From Selaginella moellendorffii (Eukaryota; Plantae; Lycopodiophyta), in NCBI RefSeq assembly GCF_000143415.4, contig NW_003314266.1:3666398-3730397 (forward strand): DNA of 64,000 nt, given 5' to 3'. A program made the position numbers and the translations under genes. The notes under the pieces were generated by a model, which ran no database searches, was not told the DNA's origin, and was given only the letters and a program-made list of their open reading frames with translations. Positions 5,320 through 64,000 of the stretch are shown here, piece after piece (the stretch's first letter is position 1; the number at the start of each line of letters is the position of its first letter).

Positions 5320-5820
5320 TTAATATGGATAATCCGAGACGCCAAGCATGGCACTGAGCGTGAGATAGACGAGATAGAGCCCGCCCACGATCACAATCAC
5401 TGCTAGAACTCCAGTCACTGGATTGCTGAGAAGATCAAAGATGGGCTTGAAGATCGAATAGAGCCCTCCAGTCGCCACCGTCAAGAAATAGATCCCATAT
5501 CTCCTCATGTTATCCCAGAATTCCTCCAGCAATGGCCCCTCCGGCCCCATCGCCAAATCCCCCAAATTTCTCCCATCTGTGGAGCCGTGAAGATCGATCG
5601 CTGCGTGCGCGGCGTCTGGATGCGTGTGGGAAAGAACACCATAGCCAATTCCAAGCGCTGCTGCTAGATACAGCGCTGTGGGCTTGAAGATCTCTTTTTG
5701 CACTGGAATTTCTGGCCGTGAGCTTGATTTTATAGAGCCCAATGGACGCGATTTGATTCTCTTCGCTCGCAACGCGGGAATTTGAGCGCAAAATGGAGAT
5801 ATTGATAGAGAAAACGCCAT
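5320..5820 (-). CDS. Ycf33/DUF751-like chloroplast membrane protein
   Basis: Transit peptide, then MGPEGPLLEEFWDNMRRYGIYFLTVATGG...LLSNP...YLTLSAMLG with two hydrophobic segments. Confidence 0.85.
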   Translation of the reverse strand: MAFSLSISPFCAQIPALRAKRIKSRPLGSIKSSSRPEIPVQKEIFKPTALYLAAALGIGYGVLSHTHPDAAHAAIDLHGSTDGRNLGDLAMGPEGPLLEEFWDNMRRYGIYFLTVATGGLYSIFKPIFDLLSNPVTGVLAVIVIVGGLYLVYLTLSAMLGVSDYPY

Positions 5821-5870
5821 AGTGGCCACTAAGAACCCTAAAATGCGTATGAAGAGCTCTGCTTTAGGGT

Positions 5871-6263
5871 TTATGAGAAGTAGCCATAGCCATCGTCGTC
5901 TTCCGTGAGCACGCTCAGATTGAGTACCTGCTTCTGGCCGATCCACATCGCATGCGCCGTGTGATCTCGCAGAGGGTTTCCGGTGTTAGGATGGATCAAC
6001 ACCGAGAAATTCCGCCGGTTGAGAGGGATCCAGGTCACAAACTCAACGAAATCTTCGTGCTTCATGAGATTTACCTCGAAATTCCCAATTCCATGAGGGC
6101 CAATTGGCTTGTCCCACACCTTGATCTTGAATTGGGGGAATTTGCCGCGTATCTCGTCCTGGAGCTCCCTGGCCTGGCGCAGCTGGGCCTGATCGGTCTG
6201 GAAGAAATAGACGTGGACGTCGTAGGATCGAACATCGAAAGGGAAATTCGGTGTCTTTGCCAT
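5871..6263 (-). CDS. DOPA 4,5-dioxygenase family protein (fungal/bacterial DodA type, not the LigB type)
   Basis: 130-aa intronless ORF with YDVHVYF, PIGPH, FEV, SVLIHPNTG..DH..AMWIG motifs typical of the DOPA_dioxygen family. Confidence 0.88.
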   Translation of the reverse strand: MAKTPNFPFDVRSYDVHVYFFQTDQAQLRQARELQDEIRGKFPQFKIKVWDKPIGPHGIGNFEVNLMKHEDFVEFVTWIPLNRRNFSVLIHPNTGNPLRDHTAHAMWIGQKQVLNLSVLTEDDDGYGYFS

Positions 6264-6306
6264 GATCATCAAACCCTAGCGAAGAACAGGGCGCTCCTTT
6301 GCTCTT

Positions 6307-7406
6307 ATGGCTCTTGTCCACGCCTTGAATTCGCGGTTCCTGGCGCCCAATCGAAGAATCGAGCGCCACCCATTTGCATTCGCGCCTAGAATCCTTGGAA
6401 ATTCGCCTCGCCGGGTATTAGCCCTCTGCGATCGATGCCTAGCTCACCACTGTGGTTTTTCTTTGGGCAGGCGAACAAGGATCGCGTCGCATGCCCTCGA
6501 TCTTCCGCGGAGGAGACGAAGCCCAAGACAGTGTTCGTCGCCGGCGCCAATGGCAAAACCGGGAAGCGCATCGTGAGCAAGCTGCTAGCGGATGGATTCA
6601 AGGTCCGCGCCGGTGTTCTGGATGTTGCCAAGGCTCGATCCAATCTACCCAGCAGCCCCAACATCGAAATTGTGTGAGATCTTCATCCATTTCCTCCATT
6701 TCTCCGCCATAGCCAAAGCTCGCCTCGTTTGTTCTTCCTTGTCTCAGATCCCGGCTGACGTGACCCAAGGGACAAATCCACTGGCAACTTCTATTGGAGA
6801 CGCGGATGCGGTGATTTGCGCTACTGGATTTCGCTACTCTCTCGATGTCCTGGCTCCCTGGAAGGTAGATTCTTTCAGGATCTCGACTGGATCGATCATA
6901 CATTCTTTCTCCTCAGGTGGACTATCGAGGAACCCTAAACCTCGTGGAAGCGTGCCGCAAGAATGGGATCAAGAGATTCGTGCTCATAAGCTCCATTCTC
7001 GTGAATGGCGCCGCGTGGGGGCAGGCGCTCAATCCGGCCTATCTGGTGCTCAATGCGTTTGGTCTCACGCTCATCGCCAAGCTCCAGGCCGAGAACTATG
7101 TGAGAAGCTCTGGGATCAATTACACGATCATCCGGCCTGGGGGCCTCTCGGAGGAGAAATCGGATGGAAACAAGAAGATCGTCATGGCAAAGCAGGCAAG
7201 GCATTGTTCTCCTTTGATTCTTTGAGAAATTGACGATTTGATCGCAGGATACGCTCTCGTCCGGATCGATTTCGCGAGATCTTGTCGCTGACGTTGCCGT
7301 GGAGTCGATCGATTGCGACGATGCGAGCTTCAAAGTAGTGGAAATCGTCGCGGAGCCTGGCGCCCAAAACCAGAGCATCGCAGAGCTCTTTGCCCTAATT
7401 TCATAA
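6307..7406 (+). CDS. Plastid NAD(P)-binding Rossmann-fold (atypical SDR) protein, multi-exon
   Basis: VFVAGANGKTGKRIV; DAVICATG; VDYRGTLNLVEAC; LISSILVNG; YTIIRPGGL; GSISRDLVA. One intron has a GC donor at 7196. Confidence 0.9.
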
Positions 7407-7475
7407 TCCTGGTGGGCCGAGTGACGCCGAAGAAATCTAGGGCGCGGCATTTTGATATTGTCTCTATCCCCAGCG

Positions 7476-8897
7476 ATGAGCGCCGATCTAGTGTCCAAGC
7501 TGCGCGCGGCGCTTCTCCATCACCAGGTTCGTCTCGATCCAGTGCCGCAGCGCCAGCACGTCGAGGATCCCAACGATCCCACGCTCGCTTACATTTCCCG
7601 GATGCTTCTGGACGAGGAGGAGGAGCCGCCGCCGCAGATGATCCAGCTCCAGGATCCCTACAAGAATCTCATCGCGGAGCTCGCCGTTCTGGTGTCTTCG
7701 CCCGGCGGCAGTGGGAATCTCATCCATCCAGACGATTCTGGAAATATTTCGGTGCCAGACGTCCACGAATCCAGGACGGGGTTCCTGAAATCGATGCTCC
7801 TGGAAGCGGCTCGAGCGGTGGCGGGGAATCGTGGCTCCGAGGTCTACAGGATCATCAGCGAGGTGAGGAGCCTGGCATCGCCAGAGGGCAGCAGTGAAGA
7901 ACGCACGGCCTTGTTCTTCGCGGATGCCCTGATTGCGCGCTTCACAGGGTTTGGGTCTCAGGTCTACAGCGCCATGGTGAAAGGGATTCGCTAGAGGCAC
8001 TCGGTCCACGTCCGGATGCTCAATCTCCCATCCTTCAGGGTCACCCAGCGATTTGCCAACGGCACCATTCTAGACTTTTGCCAAGGAGCTACGAGAATTC
8101 ACATCATCGACTATGGGATCCACTATGGCTGCCAGTGGCCCCAGCTCATCCAGAGGCTCTCGCAGCGGCCAGAGGGACCGCCGGTGATGAAGATCACAGG
8201 GATCGACTTTCCTCGCGTGGACGTCAAGGAGACAGAGAGAAACCTCGTGGAGTATGCCAAGAGCTGTGGAATCTTGCTCGAGTTTGAGGTGATCACGAGC
8301 ACGTCCTGGGAATTGGTCCAGCCCAAGACTCACGTGAATGACTTGCTCATCGTCAACTGCAACCTCCGTATCCGGCATTTGCGAGAAGATGGCAGCGTCG
8401 GCGACAATCCGCGGAAGCTCTTCTTCGAGAAGGTCTACAGCCTCAAGCCGAACCTGTTCATACAGTGCGTGTGGGATGCCGGCTCCAACTTGAGCTCCCC
8501 TTTCTTCATCCAACGTTTCGAGGGGGCTCTCGAGAGTTTCTTCACGAAGATGGACCTGTTTCAGACTCTGCTGCAAGAGGACATGCCGGAGGAGTATGAT
8601 TTCATAGGGAACATCATGGCAAAGACGATCATGAACATGGTGGCTATGGAGGGCGTTGAAAGGCTGGAGCGGCCAAATTCTTACAGGAGCTGGGATTCGA
8701 GGGCTAGAAGAGCTGGATTTGAGCAGGAACCAGTTAGGCCGAAAGCGGTGGAGCTGGTTAAGGCAGCGTGGTGCAGCAGTAAGCCCAATTGCAACTTCAA
8801 GATGGGGATGGATGGAAACTGGTTGCTACTCGGATGGAAAGAGAGGGTCCTCTATGCGATGAGCACCTGGAGGCCGCAGAACAAGCAAGCGGGCTAA
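7476..8897 (+). pseudogene. LISCL-like GRAS transcription factor (type A) with one premature stop
   Basis: In-frame TAG at 7992-7994 where paralogue 22663-24084 has GAG (KGIR-E-RHSVH). IHIID, PFF..RF and STW motifs are intact downstream. Confidence 0.88.
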
Positions 8898-11020: not shown

Positions 11021-14000
11021 CAAACCTATAATCGAAGTGACTGAAAATGCCTCGCCTCCGCCATCTTTTGAGAACCATACGACATAGTAAACAATCTAAT
11101 GGAGATTTAGATGCCTCTGAAACTATGATTGATCATGATACACATACTATAGCTGTTCAAAATAATCATGATAATGATTCTATACACCAAAATATTAATC
11201 ATGATAATGACTATATACAGCAATCAATTGGACACTCAGAAGCATCTGGAACCTTACATGCATGTCATTATGACAATTACATATATCAAACAATATTAAA
11301 TCCACCACTCCCACCCATGAATACCACACTAGCAAGCCATAGCATTTATAATGACTTTAACATAATAATTTTAATATTGGTAGTTTATCATTTGTTTGTA
11401 CTTTTTGTAATGCATTGCATTTTAAAGATGAAAACTCTTCAATGTGTTGCCAGAATAACCAAGTTATATTACCTCCAATTTCACCCTTACCATTTGATTT
11501 ACTTTCACTTTACAAGCAAAATAAAAACTCTAATTTTAAAACAAATATTAGACACTACAATAGTGCTCTTGCTTTTGCATCTATGTCTTCTAATATTGAT
11601 ATTGTAAAAGGTCATGGTCCTTATTGCTTTAAAATCCATGGTCAAATATATCATAATATTGTTTTAGCACATCCTTCTGAAGGTCAATATCAAACTTATG
11701 GACAACTTTATATGCTTGATACTCTAGAAGCTACAAATATAAGAAAGCAAAACCCTTTTAATTCAAGCTGTGAGACAAACTTACTTAAACATCTTGATGC
11801 TCTCTTTCGTCATGTTAACTCATATGCTCAAGCTTTCAAAATGATATATGAAATGGAACAAGAAGAAATTCGTTCTGCTACGCTTTCAGGTTATCCTATA
11901 CATAGTGTTTACATGTTATTAAAAACTGAAGGAACTGATCCACGACGCTATAATGCTCCACGGACAAATGATGTTGTTGTTATGTTTGTTAGTGATGATG
12001 GAGAACCGCCACATAGTCGTGAAACTTGTATATATCCAATTGCAAGCAATTTTAAATGTATCTCAACACTTGATTATAATTGTGATCCAATGGTTTACCC
12101 ATTAATATTTCCTTTTGGTGACAGAGGTTGGCACAAAAATATTTTTAATTCCGGACGTTGAATTACATTGCTCCAATATTATGCATACCGTTTATTTATA
12201 AGAGACACAATACACTTTGGTTTTGATCAAATTTTACATGCAGGAAAACTCACACAACAATATATTGTTGATGCTTATGTAAAAGTTGAAAGCAATAATT
12301 TGAATTACTATCACACTCATCAAAAACAATTATGAGTTGAAATGTATATTGGTCTTATGGATTATGTTGCAAACCGTGCTACTAATGAAAATATAAATCC
12401 AACCAAGATTGTTATTTTACCTTCAAGTTTTGGGGGTGGCCCTAGAGCAATGCAACAAAATTATCAAGATGCAATGCCTATAGTTACTCATTTTTCAAAA
12501 CCAGATCTTTTCATTACTTTTACATACAATCCCAAATGGCCAGAAATTTCTAAAAACTTACATCCAAATGAAAGCCTTGAGGATCGTCTAGATTTGGTTT
12601 CTAGAGTATTTCATATCAAGCTTAAAGAATTTTTGAATGATATTACTAAAAAACATATTTTTGAAATTGTATTGCTTTTATATATGTAATTGAATTTCAA
12701 AAGAGAGGCCTTCCACATTGTCACTTTCTAGGGATTTTATCTCATGAAAACTAAATTAAAAACCGTGATGCTATTAACCAATACATAACGGCACAATTGC
12801 TTGATCCTCAAAATGAACCTAAAATTTCTAAAATAATTACATCTCATATGATACATGGTCTTTGTGGCCCTCTTTACCCTAATAGTCTTTGCATGGAAAA
12901 TGGCTCAAAAGGTTATCCAAAAAAATTTAATTATGAAACTACTTTTAGTGTTGATGGATATCTAGATTATTATAGGCCTGATAATGGCCGTACATTTCTA
13001 AAAAATGGGTATAATCGTTGGGTAGTGCCTTATAATAAATACCTTTATAAAAAATATAATGCTCATATTAATATTGAAATTTGTGCTACTATAAAAAGTA
13101 TTAAGTATTTATTTCAATATGTTTATAAAGGTTATGATTGTGCTACAATTGAAATCCATTCAGCAACCCAACAACCTGATAATATTTTAAATTGGGATGA
13201 AATCTCAACATTTTTAAATACACGTTATGTATCTGCTCTAGAGGCAATATGGAGACTTTTTAAATTTAAAATGCATGGTCATTTGATCCCTATAATCCGT
13301 CTTCCTATTTATCTTCCAAATTTTCAAAACATCTATTTTATAGAAGGTTCTGAACAAATAGCACTTCAAAGAGCTACTCAAAATGATACAATGTTGACAA
13401 AATGGTTTGAATTAAATATAAATGACCCAAATGCTAGACAATATACATATCCTGAAATCCCTTTATATTATACATTTAACCCTCATCCTCATCACTGGCA
13501 AATTCGACATACAAGAAATGTCATTCCCTGAATGTATTCTGTGTCACCATCTAATATTGAACTATATCATTTACATCTTATTTTACTCCATAAAAAAGGT
13601 GCTACATCTTTCAAAGATCTTAAGACAGTTAATAATATTTATTATGACACATTTCAACAAATTGCAGATGCAATGGGGCTTATAGCTGATGATACCGAAT
13701 GGGAAAAATGTTTAGAAGATGCTTGCTTTTTTAGAATGCCATCACAATTAAAACAATTATTTGTATTACTTTGTATCTTTTGCACTCCAAAAGATCCTTA
13801 CCTCCTGTGGGATAAATTTAAAGACTTCCTCTTTAAGGATTTCATGCAAACAAATTCAATTTTTCATTATGAACATGCTTTACATGATATAAATATTAAA
13901 ATGAAAATGCATGGCAAAACTAATCAAAACTATCATCTACCTATGCCGTCTGAAAATTTTGATGATGAAAATATTGTCAACTCAACACAAATATATCAAA

Positions 14001-15461
14001 ATGTTGAACAAAATATTCCTCGATTTAATCAAGAACAGTTAAATATTTTTAATGATATTCTTAATGTTATTGATCACCCAACTGAGCATAATTGATACAT
14101 TTTCATTGATGGTCCTGGTGGTACTGGTAAAACATTTCTTCTTAACACTTTTATAAATATTTTACAACTGAAAAAAATAAATGTTGTTAGCATGGTTTGG
14201 ACAAAAATTGCAAATACTTTACTTTATAATGGCCGAACTTCACATACTACGTTTAAACTTTCCTGTTCCAATAAATGAAACATCAATTTCCGCTATAACT
14301 GCTAATAGTGAAGCAGGTATAAGAATCAAAACTACTAACATATTGTTATGGGATGAAATAAGTATGGTTCACACTCATGCATTCACTGCTGTTGATCAAG
14401 TGTTGCGAGACCTAAAAAATACATCATTACCTTTTGGTGGCATAATTGTTGTCACTAACAGGGACTTTAGACAAACACTTCCAGTCATTCCACATAGACA
14501 TAGGGCATAAATTGTTTCAAGTTCTGTAAGAATGAATAAATTATAGAGATTATTTAGAAAGTTATCTTTGAAAACAAATATGTGGCTTGCTGAAAGTGAT
14601 AAATCATAGTCTGAATGGCTTCTCAAAATTGGAAATGGTGAAATTTTTGAAAATTTACCATCTTTACCTTCTAACTCCATTTTATTACCTTATACACAAC
14701 TAATTTATTCATCAATTATTGATTTTGTTTACCCTTCAGTATTTGATATTTCAAACCCTTATATTGCAGCCAACCGAGTCATACTTACCCCACTTAACGA
14801 TGATATATTTGCAATCAACAACACTATTGTCTCTAAATTACAAGGTGATACATACATTTACAAAAGCATTGATTTTGTTGACACTGAACATCCTGAAAAT
14901 TTTCCAATAGAATTTCTAAATTTTATCACACCTTCTGGTCTCCCACCACATAAACTCTTTCTCAAACAAAGTGTTATTCTTATCCTTCTAAGAAATATGT
15001 CTCCATCAGCAGGATTATGCAACGGCACACGTCTCATCCTGAAAAATGCACTACCAAATGTTTTAGATTGTGAAATTGTGATGGGGCAATTTAAAGGGAT
15101 AAAAGTTTTTATCCCACGTATCACACTAATACCATTAAATACAGAAATTTCATTCAAAATGTCCAGATGACAGTTTCCAATTCGTTTGGGTTACTGCTTA
15201 ACAATCTCCAAATGCCAAGGACAGACATTTGACCGAGTTGGAGTTTACTTGCCCCACCCAGTTTTCACTCATGGGCAACTTTATGTGGCTTTATCAAGAT
15301 GCACATCACCACATGGACTTAGAATTAAAGTTCAAAACACCACACGCCAAAGCCACCTCCTTCCTCAAGATCCTTTTGTTTTTACAATTAACACTATTTA
15401 TAAAGAGGTTTTATATTGAACCTCTTTGTAAACCACCTAGCATTTGCTGGGCAAGTACTTG
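11020..15461 (+). mobile_element. Decayed autonomous Helitron (Rep/PIF1 helicase)
   Basis: Rep motifs PSSFGGGPRAMQQNYQDAM, PDLFITFT, EFQKRGLPHCH, YLFQYVYKG; helicase motifs [35 protein letters not shown]. Many stops and frameshifts. 3' hairpin at 15436-15451 followed by CTTG|T; candidate 5' end A|TC at 11020 (uncertain). Confidence 0.93.
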
Positions 15462-17400
15462 TATAATTATGAATTTATAAGTCATAATAGTGATTTTATA
15501 AAAGATTTTATTTGTATGGATGACAATATGGAAATACCAATAATGAATTGTAAGATATGATAACTCAATTACTTGATGATAATATCCAATAATCACATGC
15601 ACTACGAAGGAAATACACATGGGTGCGCAATATATATAATTTCAATTAAGACTATATCTTGCTCAAGGGTATATTATATTTGAAATAATTATTAATCAAT
15701 AATAATTAAAATCATATCATTTATTTTGATATTATATATAATGCACTCTATCTCTTTCCCCTGAATCCAAATGGAAAAGGAGTAATTTTTTAATGAAAAA
15801 CCCTTAATAACTATTTATCCTTATTTATCCTTTGAGGTTCCAAAGATCCACAGTGACAGTATATTTAAATGTTATTTTATGATCACATATGTTACAATAT
15901 AAACACCTAAATTACCAAGGAAATAATGTTTAATATCATAAAAACATTATATAAGGCCCAAGGGCATAAATTCATAAAGAATAATAGATAATAGGTATTA
16001 TTTAGAGTTAAAAATTATTAAAAGGTAAAACCAGAGGAAACTATCCAAAATGGATAATGCCAAAAGGATTTTAATACAAATATATGGGGCCTATGAATAA
16101 TAATTATGATGTGTTGAATTATAAATTGTGTATATCTAAATTGAAAACCCACTCTTTAAGTCATTGAGTAAATTTATCCTTAAAACACATATTAAGACAT
16201 GGAGGATCAACACTAATGGCCCATTTCATTAAAGATATAGTCAAATATTTTGGAACCTTAAACAATTTATAGTCCAATTGTGAGGCACCATATGTTTATA
16301 TTTATCTTTATTTAATTTGTTTTCTTCTCATTTGACTTTTTTTGTGCTTGTTTCACTTCATTTGAATTTTTTTGTTGTTTGAATTCATTTGGGGGTCAAA
16401 GCATGAAAGGGTGGGCCAGAAAATAGACATTTTTTAGTAGTTTACAGTGAATATAAATTTTAATTTTTCTATTAGATCCTTTATGATTTTTTAAAATATA
16501 AATAAATGTGGAATGTAATGTTGCATATATCTACTTCAACAAAAATTAAAAATCGTTTTTTAAAATTTAAGTTTTGGCTGAACATCCTAAAAAGTCTTTT
16601 TTATGATCTCACCCTTGACTTAGTTTTAAAACTTGGTTTTAGCTTGATTTATGAATTGCACACTATAGATGATTATTGACCATTTTGCAAATACACATGA
16701 ATGCATAGATGCCAAGATGTGTCTTCCATTCATATGTGATCATGTGGTGAGTCAAATAGATAGTGTTGACAAGCCATCAAGAATCAACATTGATGTAGTT
16801 TTTGAAAGTATAGCTACTTACCTATGTAGTGTATATGATATTAAAGGCTACTCAGTGATTCCAAAAGGTAAAGTGGTTGAAATAACTTTGATTGCTTGTG
16901 AAGTGGAAGAATTGAATGGGAGATCAAAGAAGATTTTGAATTAAATGTAAATTCTCCTCAATTAACTCCTCTTAAGCAAGAGCTTATTAGAGAAGATGCA
17001 TAAAGCATTTGGGCTATTTAGTTTCTCTTGTGATTTTCTTAACTTTGATACAAAATTATCACCGCATTTCGAGTACATGCTCCACCTCATAACTCTATGC
17101 CATATATGATATGATGATATGAATACCATACTAATAAATCTTGGGTCATGCTTCTTATACACCAATACTCCAAATAACCAAGGATCTAATAAACTAGAGG
17201 ATTTATAAAAAATTAAGGGAAAATTACAATAAAGATTGAAAATGTATGGGTAATTTAAAACTTTCAAATATATCTACAAAATGTGGTCTGCACTTTTCAA
17301 ATAGAATAATGTTGAAAGTCATCTATTTTTCTTTCTTGTACCTTAAATCTCATTTAATTTGGACCCATGTTATTTCATGAAGAAATCTAGAGCCCCAAAG

Positions 17401-60399: not shown

Positions 60400-62900
60400 A
60401 CAGTTTAGGGCATTTCATGTTCTTAGAATATTCCTTCTGAAAATATCTCATTTTCTTAAATAAATAAATACAACTTTGGAATGATGGTTTAAAAGGAGGT
60501 CCACCAAACGTTAAGTGATAAACCAGGTGATCTCCATCTAACCTCCCACCAATACCAAATTGCACTTTGTGCAAATTTGCTACCCACATCCCATGTTTCC
60601 TAAGCATTGCAGGCATAACCTTGTTGTTGTCAAACATTGCCATTGCCTGGATGTTTTCTCCAAATAGACAAAACCAAGGGCTTCTACATCAATAGTGTCA
60701 GATATCAAGTTTCCAAGCACCACCTTTCCTAAAACCCAAAAAGCCATCCATAAAAGAGAAAAGAAAAAGAAAAATAAGAAATTTACTAGTTACAAGTGAG
60801 GAGCTATTGTATTGATATGGCCTATTGTATATTTCTTGATGCAAGTCTATGGGAAGATTTGTTTAGGTTTCCAAAGTTGTCATCTTGCACTCTAAATCCC
60901 ACATGTTGACACACTTGAGTAATCTGATGAAGTAAAGCTTATCCTCCAGAAGTATGCAATTGTTAGCATTTTTTGGAGAAGATATAATGATTTATGTATT
61001 TGATTTTTCATCCTTGATAAATCTTTTTTTTTTAACTTAATTTGACTTTGTGTTTGCACTACATTCAGTCTAATCTAAAAAAGAGTTTATGAAAAAATAC
61101 AATAATGAATACTAAGCTAATAGATTAGTCTTGATTGATCTAGTTATAATTATGCTTAAGAAGGATCCACTAGTGCCATGCTAAATAATTGTGGATTAGC
61201 CTATTTGCCACTCATAGCAAACTTAGGGGAAGTTTAATTTTACTCATAGTAACATAATAACAATTCATAATAACCATTGATAGGTTTATATTAATCACAC
61301 CATAACCTTTAAGTTGTTAATATGCTTCATTTACAAGCCCAAGTGGACAAATGATTCATCCCAAATCCATTTTACAAACTCAAGCGAAAGCTTATGCAAT
61401 ATGGTACAAAAATGGTATACATTACTACTAGTGGTACTAACACATAAGTTTGGCTAGACTGTGGCACTCTTTCTTTTACATTTGCCAAAAAAAATTACCA
61501 AGCTCCACACTCAAGTGTATCCAAGCCTCAATGTACTAGTTGTCAACATGAAAGCATCCAAATCAAAAGTAAAGGCTTATAAGAATGTAACATAGCAAAT
61601 TTGAAATTCAGCAAAAGCTATATGTTTGGGTGCTTGGACACTAAGAGCTTGATTGAAATATATAAACACTGTTTAGAAAATATATTATGAGAAAAATGAT
61701 TGTTATAATGAAGCTCAAAATAATACAAGTGGGAATTCCAAAAACATAGTGAAAAATGGAAAAGCTAAAAATACCAACAGACACAAGTCAAAAATCCTAA
61801 AATGTTGTAAAAACTCTTAACACCAGTTGAAAGTCAAGCAACTCCAATAGAAATCCCTGAAAAATTAGCCAAAATTGAAGGAACTCTAATAGCATAGCTC
61901 CACTATGTCAAATGTAAAGAATCTAGAATAGATAGACATCACTATAGGATGGCTAGATAGCATATTTGGGGCTTTCTAAAAAACTTTTGCCTTGCTTTTG
62001 CTTTTAGAATATGGATGAGGAGAAACTTTGGTGTTGGAATTGTAAAATTCTTGCACTATAACTTTATCAAACTTTTGTAATGCACTTTACAATTGTTGAC
62101 AACTGTGATTAATCAATCTGTGTTGCCCATCCCAGACCTCTCCATAGTAGGCTATCTAATGCCCCAAACCATAAGGAATACTGCTCAAGACCTATGTGGA
62201 GATTATGACCTACCCTGTCAGCTACCTCCTTACCATCACAGATCACTTGAACTCTTCATCCATGCTTGGGTGTTTTAAAAACCTATGCAAAATATCTTGC
62301 TTCACATTGAGTGAGAGTTGTTATGTGGCCTTGAGAAAGCTCTCCACAGGTTGTTTGGCTATCCTTCTATCTCCTATCTCAGCCATTACTCTATGAGTTC
62401 CAGCTCTCCACCATTACCCTCATGTAACTGGTACAAGTAGTGTAATAATGATGTCATCTTGATGTTGTGACACACTCCTATTGGATAATTAAATGTATGG
62501 AAAAAAGGGAGAGCTCACAAAGCTTTGTTCTAGAACCATGCATGCTTAAGTTGTAAATGAGCTCATAACATGTGGAAATGGAAAAGATGACCATCATCAC
62601 TTGGAAGTGGAGCACACTTCCAAGTAGAATCTTTGTTGTATGGTTAACATTGGTTGTTTCCAGTTTATTCTAACTAAAAATAAAGGTTTGGGTTTATCTA
62701 ATAGACTTATATTCTATATTTAGAGAAGTGGGGATATATACATACATAAATATATATACATATATAAAATTCATATAAAATTTGTGATGCATGAGATATA
62801 TTAACAAATTGCTGTTTCTAATAAAGTTAGGACAAAATGGAATGTGAGAAGAATACATATGGCACTTCCTAAGCTAAATAAATTTTAAAAAATATAAATA
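60400..62900. other. AT-rich degenerate region, probably old transposon debris
   Basis: Abrupt drop in GC, only short broken ORFs, no diagnostic motif recognised. Confidence 0.35.
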
Positions 62901-62955
62901 CCTATACTGCAAGCTATATATTTCTATTTTATATATATATTTTATATTTTAAAAA

Positions 62956-63885
62956 ATGAATTACAGTTTTAGTTTTTCTATTTGTCATACCAAGAAAAAT
63001 ATTTTATATTTATACTTTTTATTTTATATTCACAGTTATTGTGTTTGTATTAAAACATTGTATGAAAATCCAGCAGGGGTTATTTCAATTGAGGTTAGAC
63101 AAAACATAATAATACCAACTATTAAAGAGCTTATTAAAGAAGTAGGCAAAAGAAAAGAAATTTTTATGGGATTTTCTTACTCTAAAATTTTACATGAACA
63201 AGATACTAGCTTACTTATTACAATAAGTGCACTTGACATGCAAATGTCAAGAAAAAACTTTTATATATATTGTACTATTATTCCTTTTCTTTTTACTTTA
63301 AATAATGGTAAAGCCATAGAGAAAGAGTTTACTTTAACATTACAAAATTATGTTGAGCAAGACTTAGTAACATATGGATCTGTAGAGTATATAAATGGAA
63401 GATATTCTATATCATATGTATTAGATAAAGATAGTAATGTTTACTTACAAGAGTTTCTAAATACTAATAATTTTATTTTATTTAAAGAAGAAACAGATTG
63501 TATTCTTCATAAAACCTGTATTAAAAGTGGACCAAATTATTCATCATTTTCTCGCCTTAGGGAAGGAGAGTTTCTTCAATCACCAAATTTAGTATTTATT
63601 TTATATATGCGATTTGATTGTAATCTTGTGTTATATTATGGTAAAATTTCTATTTGGGATACTGAAACATCAGGAAAAGGTATTGGATGTTTTCTACGTT
63701 TTCAGAAAGATGGAAATCTTGTTATTTATAATCAGTATCATAACGTTGTATGGTCTTATGATATTTATTGGAAGAATATTTGGGTTACATTTTCATTATG
63801 TGTAGAAAATACAGGTCATGTTACTGTATATAATACAAATAATCAGACATCTATTTGGAGAAGGCCTATAGAAAGAAAAAAATGA
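62956..63885 (+). CDS. Unknown N-terminal domain + B-lectin protein, AT-rich paralogue of 20671-21507
   Basis: 309-aa open frame in very AT-rich DNA. Hydrophobic N-terminal stretch; INGRYSISYVLD and IKSGP shared with 20671; MRFDCNLVLY..FQKDGNLVIY..VVWS lectin motifs. Confidence 0.85.
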   Translation: MNYSFSFSICHTKKNILYLYFLFYIHSYCVCIKTLYENPAGVISIEVRQNIIIPTIKELIKEVGKRKEIFMGFSYSKILHEQDTSLLITISALDMQMSRKNFYIYCTIIPFLFTLNNGKAIEKEFTLTLQNYVEQDLVTYGSVEYINGRYSISYVLDKDSNVYLQEFLNTNNFILFKEETDCILHKTCIKSGPNYSSFSRLREGEFLQSPNLVFILYMRFDCNLVLYYGKISIWDTETSGKGIGCFLRFQKDGNLVIYNQYHNVVWSYDIYWKNIWVTFSLCVENTGHVTVYNTNNQTSIWRRPIERKK

Positions 63886-64000
63886 GTTATACTTATGAAC
63901 AAATAAGAAATTAATTTATATTTAATTTTAAATAAATGTATACGAATTACTGAATAAGTAGATATTTTAGGACATAATTATTTTAAGAAATCTCTCAAGG

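What the first reader, a model, noticed from the sequence alone, without database searches (positions are those of the whole stretch)
5871..6263. Microbial-type DOPA 4,5-dioxygenase in a plant genome
Seen: an intact intronless 130-aa ORF with the His motifs (YDVHVYF, GPH, LIHP, DH) of the DodA/DOPA_dioxygen family. Known: this family makes betalamic acid and muscaflavin in Amanita and some bacteria, whereas Caryophyllales use the unrelated LigB-type DODA. Inference: an ancient retained or horizontally acquired extradiol ring-cleavage enzyme, possibly supporting unrecognised catechol or betalain-like chemistry. It is flanked by plant genes, so contamination is unlikely.
Basis: partly seen in the sequence, partly recalled or inferred. 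Interest (0 to 1): 0.72.

Follow-up and report, generated by a model that had tools for sequence, protein, structure and literature searches.

The report
Amanita-type dioxygenase gene of seed-free plants
The spikemoss Selaginella carries an intact gene for the small "fly-agaric type" ring-cleaving dioxygenase, but it is an old gene shared with liverworts, a hornwort, clubmosses and ferns, not a recent import, and what it does in plants is untested.

Summary
Window 5871-6263 (minus strand) is an intact 130-aa ORF that matches Pfam PF08883 (DOPA_dioxygen) over the full domain (E 8e-37). It keeps every family-invariant His/Asp, and its model superposes on the solved family structures 2PEB, 2NYH and 2P8I (rmsd 1.2-1.6 Å).

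The genome is Selaginella moellendorffii. The gene lies between plant genes (DUF751, an intron-bearing NmrA-like gene, GRAS). It is also present, in the same gene order, on the second haplotype.

It is not a Selaginella oddity. Orthologues occur in ferns, another lycophyte, liverworts and a hornwort, and they form one clade (UFBoot 99 / SH-aLRT 96) whose subclades follow plant taxonomy. This excludes recent transfer and contamination and dates the gene to at least the land-plant ancestor.

No seed plant, named moss or named alga appeared among the relatives. The deeper origin (ancient transfer or retention) is unresolved: an AU test cannot separate a eukaryotic from a bacterial affinity.

I infer a metal-dependent extradiol catechol dioxygenase that probably cleaves L-DOPA in vitro. 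The substrate in plants is unknown.

The scan reached the same conclusion earlier on the other haplotype (s1-420846).

The parts
5871..6263 (-). Complete intronless CDS (130 aa plus TAA stop) of a PF08883 DodA-type extradiol dioxygenase. The domain spans residues 14-117. The C-terminal tail is acidic and ends in a YG-aromatic motif shared with lycophyte and fern orthologues.
6264..6434 (.). Short divergent intergenic region between the dioxygenase ATG (6263) and the first long ORF of the NmrA-like gene (ATG 6435). On the other haplotype the annotated neighbour model begins only 44 bp from the dioxygenase ATG. A shared bidirectional promoter is inferred, not shown.
5320..5820 (-). Downstream same-strand neighbour: a 166-aa DUF751 (PF05421) protein with a transit-peptide-like N-terminus. 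Its ATG lies only 50 bp after the dioxygenase stop codon.
6435..7225 (+). Upstream divergent neighbour: NmrA-like / NAD(P)H-binding Rossmann gene, split by short introns. Exons were seen at 6435-6674 and 6917-7222; the exact splice sites were not determined.
7452..7994 (+). Start of a GRAS-domain transcription factor gene, a plant-type context marker.

Best explanation
This is a genuine single-copy nuclear gene of Selaginella moellendorffii. It encodes a small (about 15 kDa), probably cytosolic member of the DodA / DOPA_dioxygen family (PF08883), the family that contains the Amanita muscaria, Gluconacetobacter and Anabaena L-DOPA extradiol dioxygenases.

Shown here: it belongs to a clade of orthologues found in liverworts, a hornwort, lycophytes and ferns. 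It was therefore already present in the common ancestor of living land plants and has been inherited vertically since. It appears to have been lost in seed plants.

Inferred mechanism: the protein folds as the ferredoxin-like alpha+beta domain of 2PEB/2NYH, probably as a homodimer. The invariant histidines (H17, H57, H91, H101, with D100 nearby) would hold a divalent metal, most likely Fe(II). A catechol substrate would bind the metal, O2 would be activated, and the ring would be cleaved next to the diol. With L-DOPA this yields 4,5- and/or 2,3-seco-DOPA, which cyclise spontaneously to betalamic acid and muscaflavin.

I put in-vitro L-DOPA cleavage at about 60%. The physiological substrate in plants is unknown and may be another catechol.
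For: Family membership:
- Pfam E 7.8e-37 over the full domain.
- phmmer hits to PDB 2PEB (3e-17) and 2NYH/2P8I (1e-15).
- All positions invariant in 89 diverse family members (H17, Y19, P56, H57, H91, H101, G109, plus D100, W78, W107) are retained.
- The AlphaFold2 model has pLDDT 94.5 and matches 2peb_A at rmsd 1.2 Å, TM 0.85.

Plant gene:
- It lies on a 4.1-Mb scaffold between DUF751, an intron-bearing NmrA-like gene and a GRAS gene.
- The second haplotype has the same gene order, with 7 nucleotide differences, 5 of them synonymous.

Vertical descent:
- Named orthologues come from Adiantum (two species), Ceratopteris, Diphasiastrum, Marchantia, Riccia and Nothoceros.
- The plant clade has support 99/96, with lycophytes 99/88, ferns 100/98 and liverworts 98/91.
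- Vascular-plant monophyly is not rejected (AU p 0.42).
- The Ceratopteris orthologue carries a spliceosomal intron.
- The Nothoceros sequence comes from a transcriptome assembly.

Function by homology:
- AmDODA, GdDODA and AcDODA are about 32% identical to one another and are kin of 2P8I/2PEB. All three cleave L-DOPA at both the 4,5 and 2,3 positions.
- A His-His-His site corresponding to the Zn site of 2PEB is proposed as the metal site (PMC9097196; PMC6426604).
- The Selaginella protein is 31-41% identical to bacterial members and 38-51% to fungal members.
Against: - No enzyme of the plant clade has been assayed.
- The kinetics of the characterised members on L-DOPA are poor: Km 1.4-4.5 mM, and kcat 0.5 per min for GdDODA. 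L-DOPA may therefore be a side substrate for the family.
- To my knowledge, no betalain or hygroaurin pigments are reported from seed-free plants.
- No tyrosinase or CYP76AD-like partner lies next to the gene.
- The claimed losses in seed plants and mosses rest on absence from hit lists, and several plant-clade sequences are unnamed.
Confidence: 0.72

Rival explanations
1. Origin rival A: a single ancient horizontal transfer, from a fungus-like eukaryote or a bacterium, into the stem lineage of land plants, followed by vertical descent and loss in seed plants.
For: - No named green alga, streptophyte alga, red alga or glaucophyte appeared among the closest relatives.
- The gene is intronless in Selaginella, Diphasiastrum, Marchantia and Riccia.
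- The nearest named outsiders are fungi of all major phyla and an amoebozoan.
- A grouping of plants with bacteria is not rejected (AU p 0.38).
Against: - The plant clade is not nested inside any fungal or bacterial group. It is one arm of an unresolved polytomy, and in one quick tree it sits outside all other eukaryote rows.
- Many close hits are unnamed and could be algae or protists.
- A 130-aa gene without introns is weak evidence of transfer.
Confidence: 0.4
2. Origin rival B: an ancient eukaryotic gene inherited vertically into the green lineage and retained only in seed-free land plants, with many independent losses elsewhere.
For: - Eukaryote-dominated rows (plants, fungi from chytrids to Dikarya, Balamuthia) separate from the bacterial rows at 91/84 and group at 88/85.
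- A plant clade outside the fungi plus Amoebozoa rows is what vertical descent predicts.
Against: - It requires losses in all sampled algae, in mosses and in seed plants.
- Support for the deep branches is weak, and the AU test does not reject plants plus bacteria.
- Only 134 alignment columns are available.
Confidence: 0.32
3. Function rival: the enzyme is a catechol extradiol dioxygenase whose native substrate in plants is not L-DOPA (for example another phenylpropanoid- or tyrosine-derived catechol, for catabolism or detoxification). Any betalamic-acid formation would be an in-vitro side reaction.
For: - Characterised family members have millimolar Km and very low turnover on L-DOPA.
- The family is very widespread: 1083 clusters in the exhaustive search, in bacteria and fungi that make no betalains.
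- The plant clade has its own fixed residues (S13, T23, K48, W50, L66, P97) that are rare in other members.
- No pathway partners are adjacent.
Against: Three distant members from a fungus, an alphaproteobacterium and a cyanobacterium all accept L-DOPA. No alternative substrate has been demonstrated for any member in the papers read.
Confidence: 0.4
4. Artefact rival: a contaminating fungal or bacterial sequence in the assembly, or a recent transfer specific to Selaginella.
For: Before comparison, the family is known mainly from fungi and bacteria. RefSeq names the protein after a fungal '21.2 kDa protein'.
Against: - The gene sits in a 4.1-Mb scaffold among plant genes, and the allelic copy on the second haplotype has the same neighbours.
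- The closest relatives are other land plants at 52-61% identity, against at most 51% for fungi and at most 41% for bacteria.
- The plant clade has 99/96 support.
Confidence: 0.02

Closest known systems
Amanita muscaria DodA (AmDODA) and the bacterial GdDODA (Gluconacetobacter diazotrophicus) and AcDODA (Anabaena cylindrica): the characterised PF08883 L-DOPA extradiol dioxygenases
   Same: Same Pfam family, the same single small domain, and the same invariant His/Asp set proposed as the metal site.
   Different: The plant protein is untested. It is shorter than the fungal enzymes (130 aa against 185 aa for AmDODA) and has no introns, whereas dodA has four. It belongs to a separate land-plant clade with its own fixed residues. 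Direct identity to AmDODA was not computed, because no tool supplied that sequence.
PDB 2PEB (Nostoc punctiforme) and 2NYH/2P8I (Paraburkholderia xenovorans) 'putative dioxygenases'
   Same: 31-32% identity, the same fold (rmsd 1.2-1.6 Å over 110-114 columns) and the same conserved histidines.
   Different: These are bacterial structural-genomics targets with no published activity in the papers I read. The plant protein adds about 12 N-terminal and about 12 C-terminal residues of lower model confidence.
LigB-type DODA of Caryophyllales (and E. coli YgiD)
   Same: The same reaction on L-DOPA is reported (4,5-extradiol cleavage to betalamic acid).
   Different: An unrelated family and fold. The Pfam scan of this ORF returns only PF08883 and no LigB domain. 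[quoted passage not shown]
Orthologues in seed-free plants: Marchantia MPTK1_2g09460, Riccia R1flu_009695, Diphasiastrum O6H91_13G064900, Ceratopteris KP509_21G004800, Adiantum GOP47_0006538, and a Nothoceros transcript
   Same: 50-59% identity, one clade, the same invariant residues, and a YG-aromatic C-terminus shared with lycophytes and ferns.
   Different: Ceratopteris has one roughly 930-bp intron. The Marchantia and Riccia models carry annotated N-terminal extensions. No conserved neighbourhood was seen.

Membership tests
PF08883 DOPA_dioxygen (DodA-type extradiol dioxygenases) | Profile-HMM score above Pfam's gathering threshold over the whole domain | tested here: met
   126.2 bits against a cut-off of 25, E 7.8e-37, profile positions 1-105 of 106
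PF08883 DOPA_dioxygen (DodA-type extradiol dioxygenases) | Invariant histidines and the neighbouring Asp of the proposed metal site (HxY, GPH, HP, DH) | tested here: met
   H17, Y19, P56, H57, H91, H101 and G109 are invariant, and D100, W78 and W107 nearly invariant, in 89 diverse members. All are present in the query and aligned with 2PEB/2NYH.
PF08883 DOPA_dioxygen (DodA-type extradiol dioxygenases) | Ferredoxin-like alpha+beta fold of 2PEB/2NYH | tested here: met
   Model pLDDT 94.5. The top Foldseek hits are 2peb_A, 2nyh and 2p8i (E about 2e-11, TM 0.85, rmsd 1.2-1.6 Å); the next hits have E above 7e-3.
PF08883 DOPA_dioxygen (DodA-type extradiol dioxygenases) | Metal-dependent extradiol cleavage of L-DOPA (4,5 and 2,3) | not testable with these tools
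   Shown only for AmDODA, GdDODA and AcDODA in the literature. It needs a recombinant assay.
PF08883 DOPA_dioxygen (DodA-type extradiol dioxygenases) | Homodimeric assembly, as in GdDODA and 2NYH | not tested
   Only a monomer was modelled. The dimer is reported for GdDODA and 2NYH in PMC6426604.
LigB-type DODA (class III extradiol dioxygenases of Caryophyllales, YgiD) | LigB domain | tested here: not met
   The Pfam scan returns PF08883 only. The fold search returns no LigB structure.
Betalain / hygroaurin biosynthetic pathway | Presence of an L-DOPA-forming partner (tyrosinase or CYP76AD) or other pathway genes beside the dioxygenase | tested here: not met
   The neighbours are DUF751, an NmrA-like gene, GRAS, PIH1, Tab2-like and PsaK. 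The rest of the genome was not searched.
Horizontally transferred gene specific to Selaginella | Nearest relatives are non-plant, with no orthologues in other plants | tested here: not met
   The nearest relatives are land plants, and the plant clade has 99/96 support.

The most novel reading that the evidence does not exclude
Seed-free land plants (liverworts, hornworts, lycophytes, ferns) use this DodA-type enzyme in vivo to open L-DOPA or a related catechol. That would feed an unrecognised family of seco-catechol-derived metabolites (betalamic-acid or muscaflavin-like). The pathway would have been lost with the gene in seed plants, long before Caryophyllales re-invented betalains with an unrelated LigB enzyme.
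Probability: 0.12. Interest if true: 0.75.

Novelty: new member of a known kind. Interest (0 to 1): 0.4.

Why it matters
Betalain research treats AmDODA-type enzymes as fungal and bacterial, and plant DODAs as LigB-type only. I found no paper in the searchable library that mentions the plant members, by Pfam name or by gene identifier.

Several features together point to a conserved but unknown role in catechol chemistry:
- the clade is conserved across liverworts, a hornwort, lycophytes and ferns;
- it is under purifying constraint;
- it is absent from the seed-plant sequences searched.

This role is easy to test, by recombinant assay or by a Marchantia knockout. If the plant enzymes do cleave L-DOPA, they would be a compact plant-native alternative for betalain engineering. 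The gene would also be a case of a pathway component lost at the origin of seed plants.

The finding is still an ordinary family member with an inferred function, and public databases already label its orthologues automatically as 'DOPA 4,5-dioxygenase'.

Tried and rejected
- NCBIfam scan: no hit. That library covers prokaryotic naming models, so this is uninformative.
- Literature searches found nothing on plant members. I searched PF08883, DOPA_dioxygen and InterPro ids, the term 'DOPA 4 5-dioxygenase' with Marchantia or Selaginella, the gene ids (Mp2g09460, Mapoly0158s0017, SELMODRAFT_6300, XP_002977209), and the SRA run ids of the unnamed contigs.
- The single Ephedra mention of DOPA_dioxygen is a weak multi-domain EST label, not evidence of a seed-plant orthologue.
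- PMC6664185 (Burroughs et al.) is not held.
- The ESM Atlas look-up returned only bacterial PF08883 clusters and no structure.
- The search with the nearest orphan outgroup, P0021, was meant to find named algal relatives and found none.
- Unnamed Logan, JGI and ENA members of the plant clade could not be assigned to species. Only P0004 could be called plant-like, from its PPR-gene neighbour.
- AU tests did not resolve the deep origin: plants plus bacteria is not rejected.
- No conserved synteny was found around the orthologues.
- AmDODA itself was not placed on the tree or compared directly, because no tool returned its sequence and I did not type it in.
- Contamination and recent transfer were considered and rejected.

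Full report
**1. The observation**

On the minus strand an ATG at 6263-6261 opens a 130-codon frame that ends with TAA at 5873-5871. A second in-frame ATG two codons upstream (6269-6267) is possible, but alignment with orthologues favours the 6263 start. The translated ORF matches Pfam PF08883 (DOPA_dioxygen) at 126 bits, E 7.8e-37, covering profile positions 1-105 of 106. NCBIfam, a library of prokaryotic naming models, has no model for it.

In my alignment of 89 diverse members, H17, Y19, P56, H57, H91, H101 and G109 are invariant, and D100, W78 and W107 nearly so. The Selaginella protein has all of them.

**2. Fold**

The protein hits the three solved structures of the family by sequence: 2PEB from Nostoc (E 3e-17) and 2NYH/2P8I from Paraburkholderia (E 1e-15). 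An AlphaFold2 model built on the 89-sequence alignment has mean pLDDT 94.5. Its only significant Foldseek matches are those same entries (E about 2e-11, TM 0.85 on the target, rmsd 1.2-1.6 Å over 110-114 columns). The next hits are generic ferredoxin-like folds with E above 7e-3.

**3. Genome and context**

The exact protein is in public collections on a 4,135,178-bp contig. Its 90% cluster holds XP_002977209.2, 'uncharacterized 21.2 kDa protein [Selaginella moellendorffii]', on a second scaffold of 1.85 Mb. At 130 aa the protein is about 15 kDa, so the RefSeq name is evidently borrowed from fungal homologues labelled 'putative 21.2 kDa protein'.

The neighbours in the window are plant genes:
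- a DUF751 protein with a transit-peptide-like N-terminus (5320-5820, same strand);
- an NmrA-like NAD(P)-binding gene with short introns (from 6435, opposite strand);
- a GRAS gene (from 7452).

The second scaffold has the same order: GRAS, NmrA-like, dioxygenase, then PIH1, Tab2-like and PsaK. It aligns with the window at 97.0% identity over 7 kb with 55 gapped positions. The CDS differs at only 7 of 393 bases with no gaps; five of those differences are synonymous and two are not (D10R, Q110E). These are the two haplotypes of the assembly. The small numbers are in line with purifying selection. Contamination is excluded.

**4. Relatives**

The word-indexed search with the protein, and then with a 13-sequence alignment, together with the exhaustive HMMER search, gave a consistent picture. 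The exhaustive search returned 1083 clusters at E up to 1e-3 and only three at E up to 1e-30.

The closest sequences, at 50-61% identity, are all from seed-free land plants wherever a name is available:
- ferns: Adiantum nelumboides, A. capillus-veneris and Ceratopteris richardii;
- lycophyte: Diphasiastrum complanatum;
- liverworts: Marchantia polymorpha and Riccia fluitans;
- hornwort: Nothoceros aenigmaticus (a Trinity transcript in EukProt, hence expressed there).

Nine further unnamed Logan, JGI and ENA sequences belong with them. One of these (P0004) lies beside an 883-aa PPR gene, a land-plant hallmark.

Next come fungi of every major phylum and Balamuthia, at 36-51% identity. Bacteria follow at 31-41%. 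No seed plant, named moss or named alga appeared. With hundreds of angiosperm proteomes in the collection, an angiosperm orthologue inside the plant clade would have ranked at the top. These remain absences from hit lists, however, and several plant-clade members are unnamed. A search from the nearest orphan outsider (P0021) found no named alga either.

**5. Phylogeny**

I ran a careful IQ-TREE analysis: 81 rows, 134 columns, LG+C20+F+G4 PMSF, ultrafast bootstrap / SH-aLRT. The rows left out were long-branch or compositionally odd representatives and most unnamed representatives.

The support values are:

| Group | UFBoot / SH-aLRT |
|---|---|
| All 17 plant and plant-like rows | 99 / 96 |
| Lycophytes (Diphasiastrum, Selaginella, three unnamed) | 99 / 88 |
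| Ferns | 100 / 98 |
| Liverworts | 98 / 91 |

The order of these groups is weakly resolved. A constraint joining lycophytes and ferns, as in the species tree, is not rejected (AU p 0.42). The gene tree is therefore compatible with vertical descent from the land-plant ancestor.

Outside the plants the tree is a polytomy. A eukaryote-dominated group (88/85) is set apart from the bacterial rows (91/84). In one quick tree the plants fall outside all other eukaryote rows. The AU test nevertheless does not reject plants plus bacteria as one clade (p 0.38). With 134 columns the deep origin cannot be decided. I rate a single ancient transfer into the land-plant stem at about 0.4 and deep eukaryotic retention with many losses at about 0.3.

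**6. Gene structure**

The gene is intronless in Selaginella, Diphasiastrum, Marchantia and Riccia, since the gene span equals the CDS length. Ceratopteris has one intron of about 930 bp directly after the HPNTG motif. No neighbourhood is conserved among these species.

**7. Function**

The literature read here shows the following.
- AmDODA (185 aa, four introns), GdDODA and AcDODA are mutually about 32% identical. All three are related to 2P8I/2PEB.
- All three cleave L-DOPA at both the 4,5 and 2,3 positions, giving betalamic acid and muscaflavin.
- All three are metal-dependent, with a His-His-His site that corresponds to the Zn site of 2PEB (PMC9097196).
- GdDODA is 46% identical to 2NYH and is a homodimer, with Km 1.36 mM and kcat 0.5 per min (PMC6426604).

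The Selaginella protein is about as similar to bacterial and fungal members as the characterised enzymes are to each other, and it keeps the whole proposed site. I therefore infer a metal-dependent extradiol catechol dioxygenase that would probably (about 60%) open L-DOPA in vitro.

Several points argue against assuming that L-DOPA is the native substrate or that betalain-like pigments are made:
- the kinetics of the known enzymes are poor;
- the family is very widely distributed in organisms without betalains;
- the plant clade has its own fixed residues (S13, T23, K48, W50, L66, P97);
- no pathway partners lie nearby;
- as far as I know, such pigments are not reported from seed-free plants.

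**8. What could not be done**

AmDODA itself was not aligned or placed on the tree, because no tool returned its sequence.

**9. Earlier work in this scan**

A look-up by words showed that the scan had already followed up the same gene on another piece of this genome (s1-420846), evidently the other haplotype. Its conclusion was the same, and it added that the gene is transcribed. My analyses were done independently before I saw that note. Its transcription claim remains unchecked by me.

**10. Verdict**

This is a new, uncharacterised plant branch of a known enzyme family. It is of moderate interest because it is easily testable and is not discussed in the literature I could search.

Noticed in passing
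window 5820-5871 and 6264-6434: The packing is extremely tight. The DUF751 gene's ATG (5820) lies 50 bp after the dioxygenase stop on the same strand. The divergent NmrA-like gene starts 172 bp from the dioxygenase ATG by its first long ORF, or 44 bp by the annotated model on the other haplotype. This implies overlapping UTRs or promoters, or read-through transcription.
   Followed up: partly
L014:6001-7385 (Ceratopteris richardii CM035426.1): The fern orthologue has a single intron of about 930 bp directly after the HPNTG motif. The Selaginella, Diphasiastrum, Marchantia and Riccia genes are intronless.
   Followed up: yes
P0019 (Marchantia, 187 aa), P0170 (293 aa), P0169 (Riccia, 223 aa): The liverwort gene models carry N-terminal extensions of 55 to about 90 residues that have no counterpart in other plants. 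An internal Met aligns with the start of all the other orthologues. The extensions are either over-extended annotations or a targeting peptide.
   Followed up: no
P0287 (MCP8719391.1, 'Asgard group archaeon' MAG) in the cluster of P0098: A protein labelled as coming from an Asgard archaeon MAG sits in the same 90%-identity cluster as Candida tropicalis 'putative 21.2 kDa protein' sequences. It is most likely a yeast contig binned into the MAG.
   Followed up: no
window 12001-16000 and 62001-64000: These AT-rich stretches (GC 0.29-0.31) stand out against about 0.45-0.57 in the gene-dense parts of the window. They may be repeats or transposon remnants.
   Followed up: no
L017 (Logan SRR25018404 contig, 4986 bp): An unnamed PF08883 homologue (P0025, 42% identical) lies beside a Stealth-domain gene and a C-type lectin gene. 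It comes from an unidentified non-plant eukaryote.
   Followed up: no
window 6264-6272: An alternative in-frame ATG (6269-6267) and TTG (6272-6270) lie just upstream of the accepted start. They would add 2-3 residues (M-I or M-M-I).
   Followed up: partly
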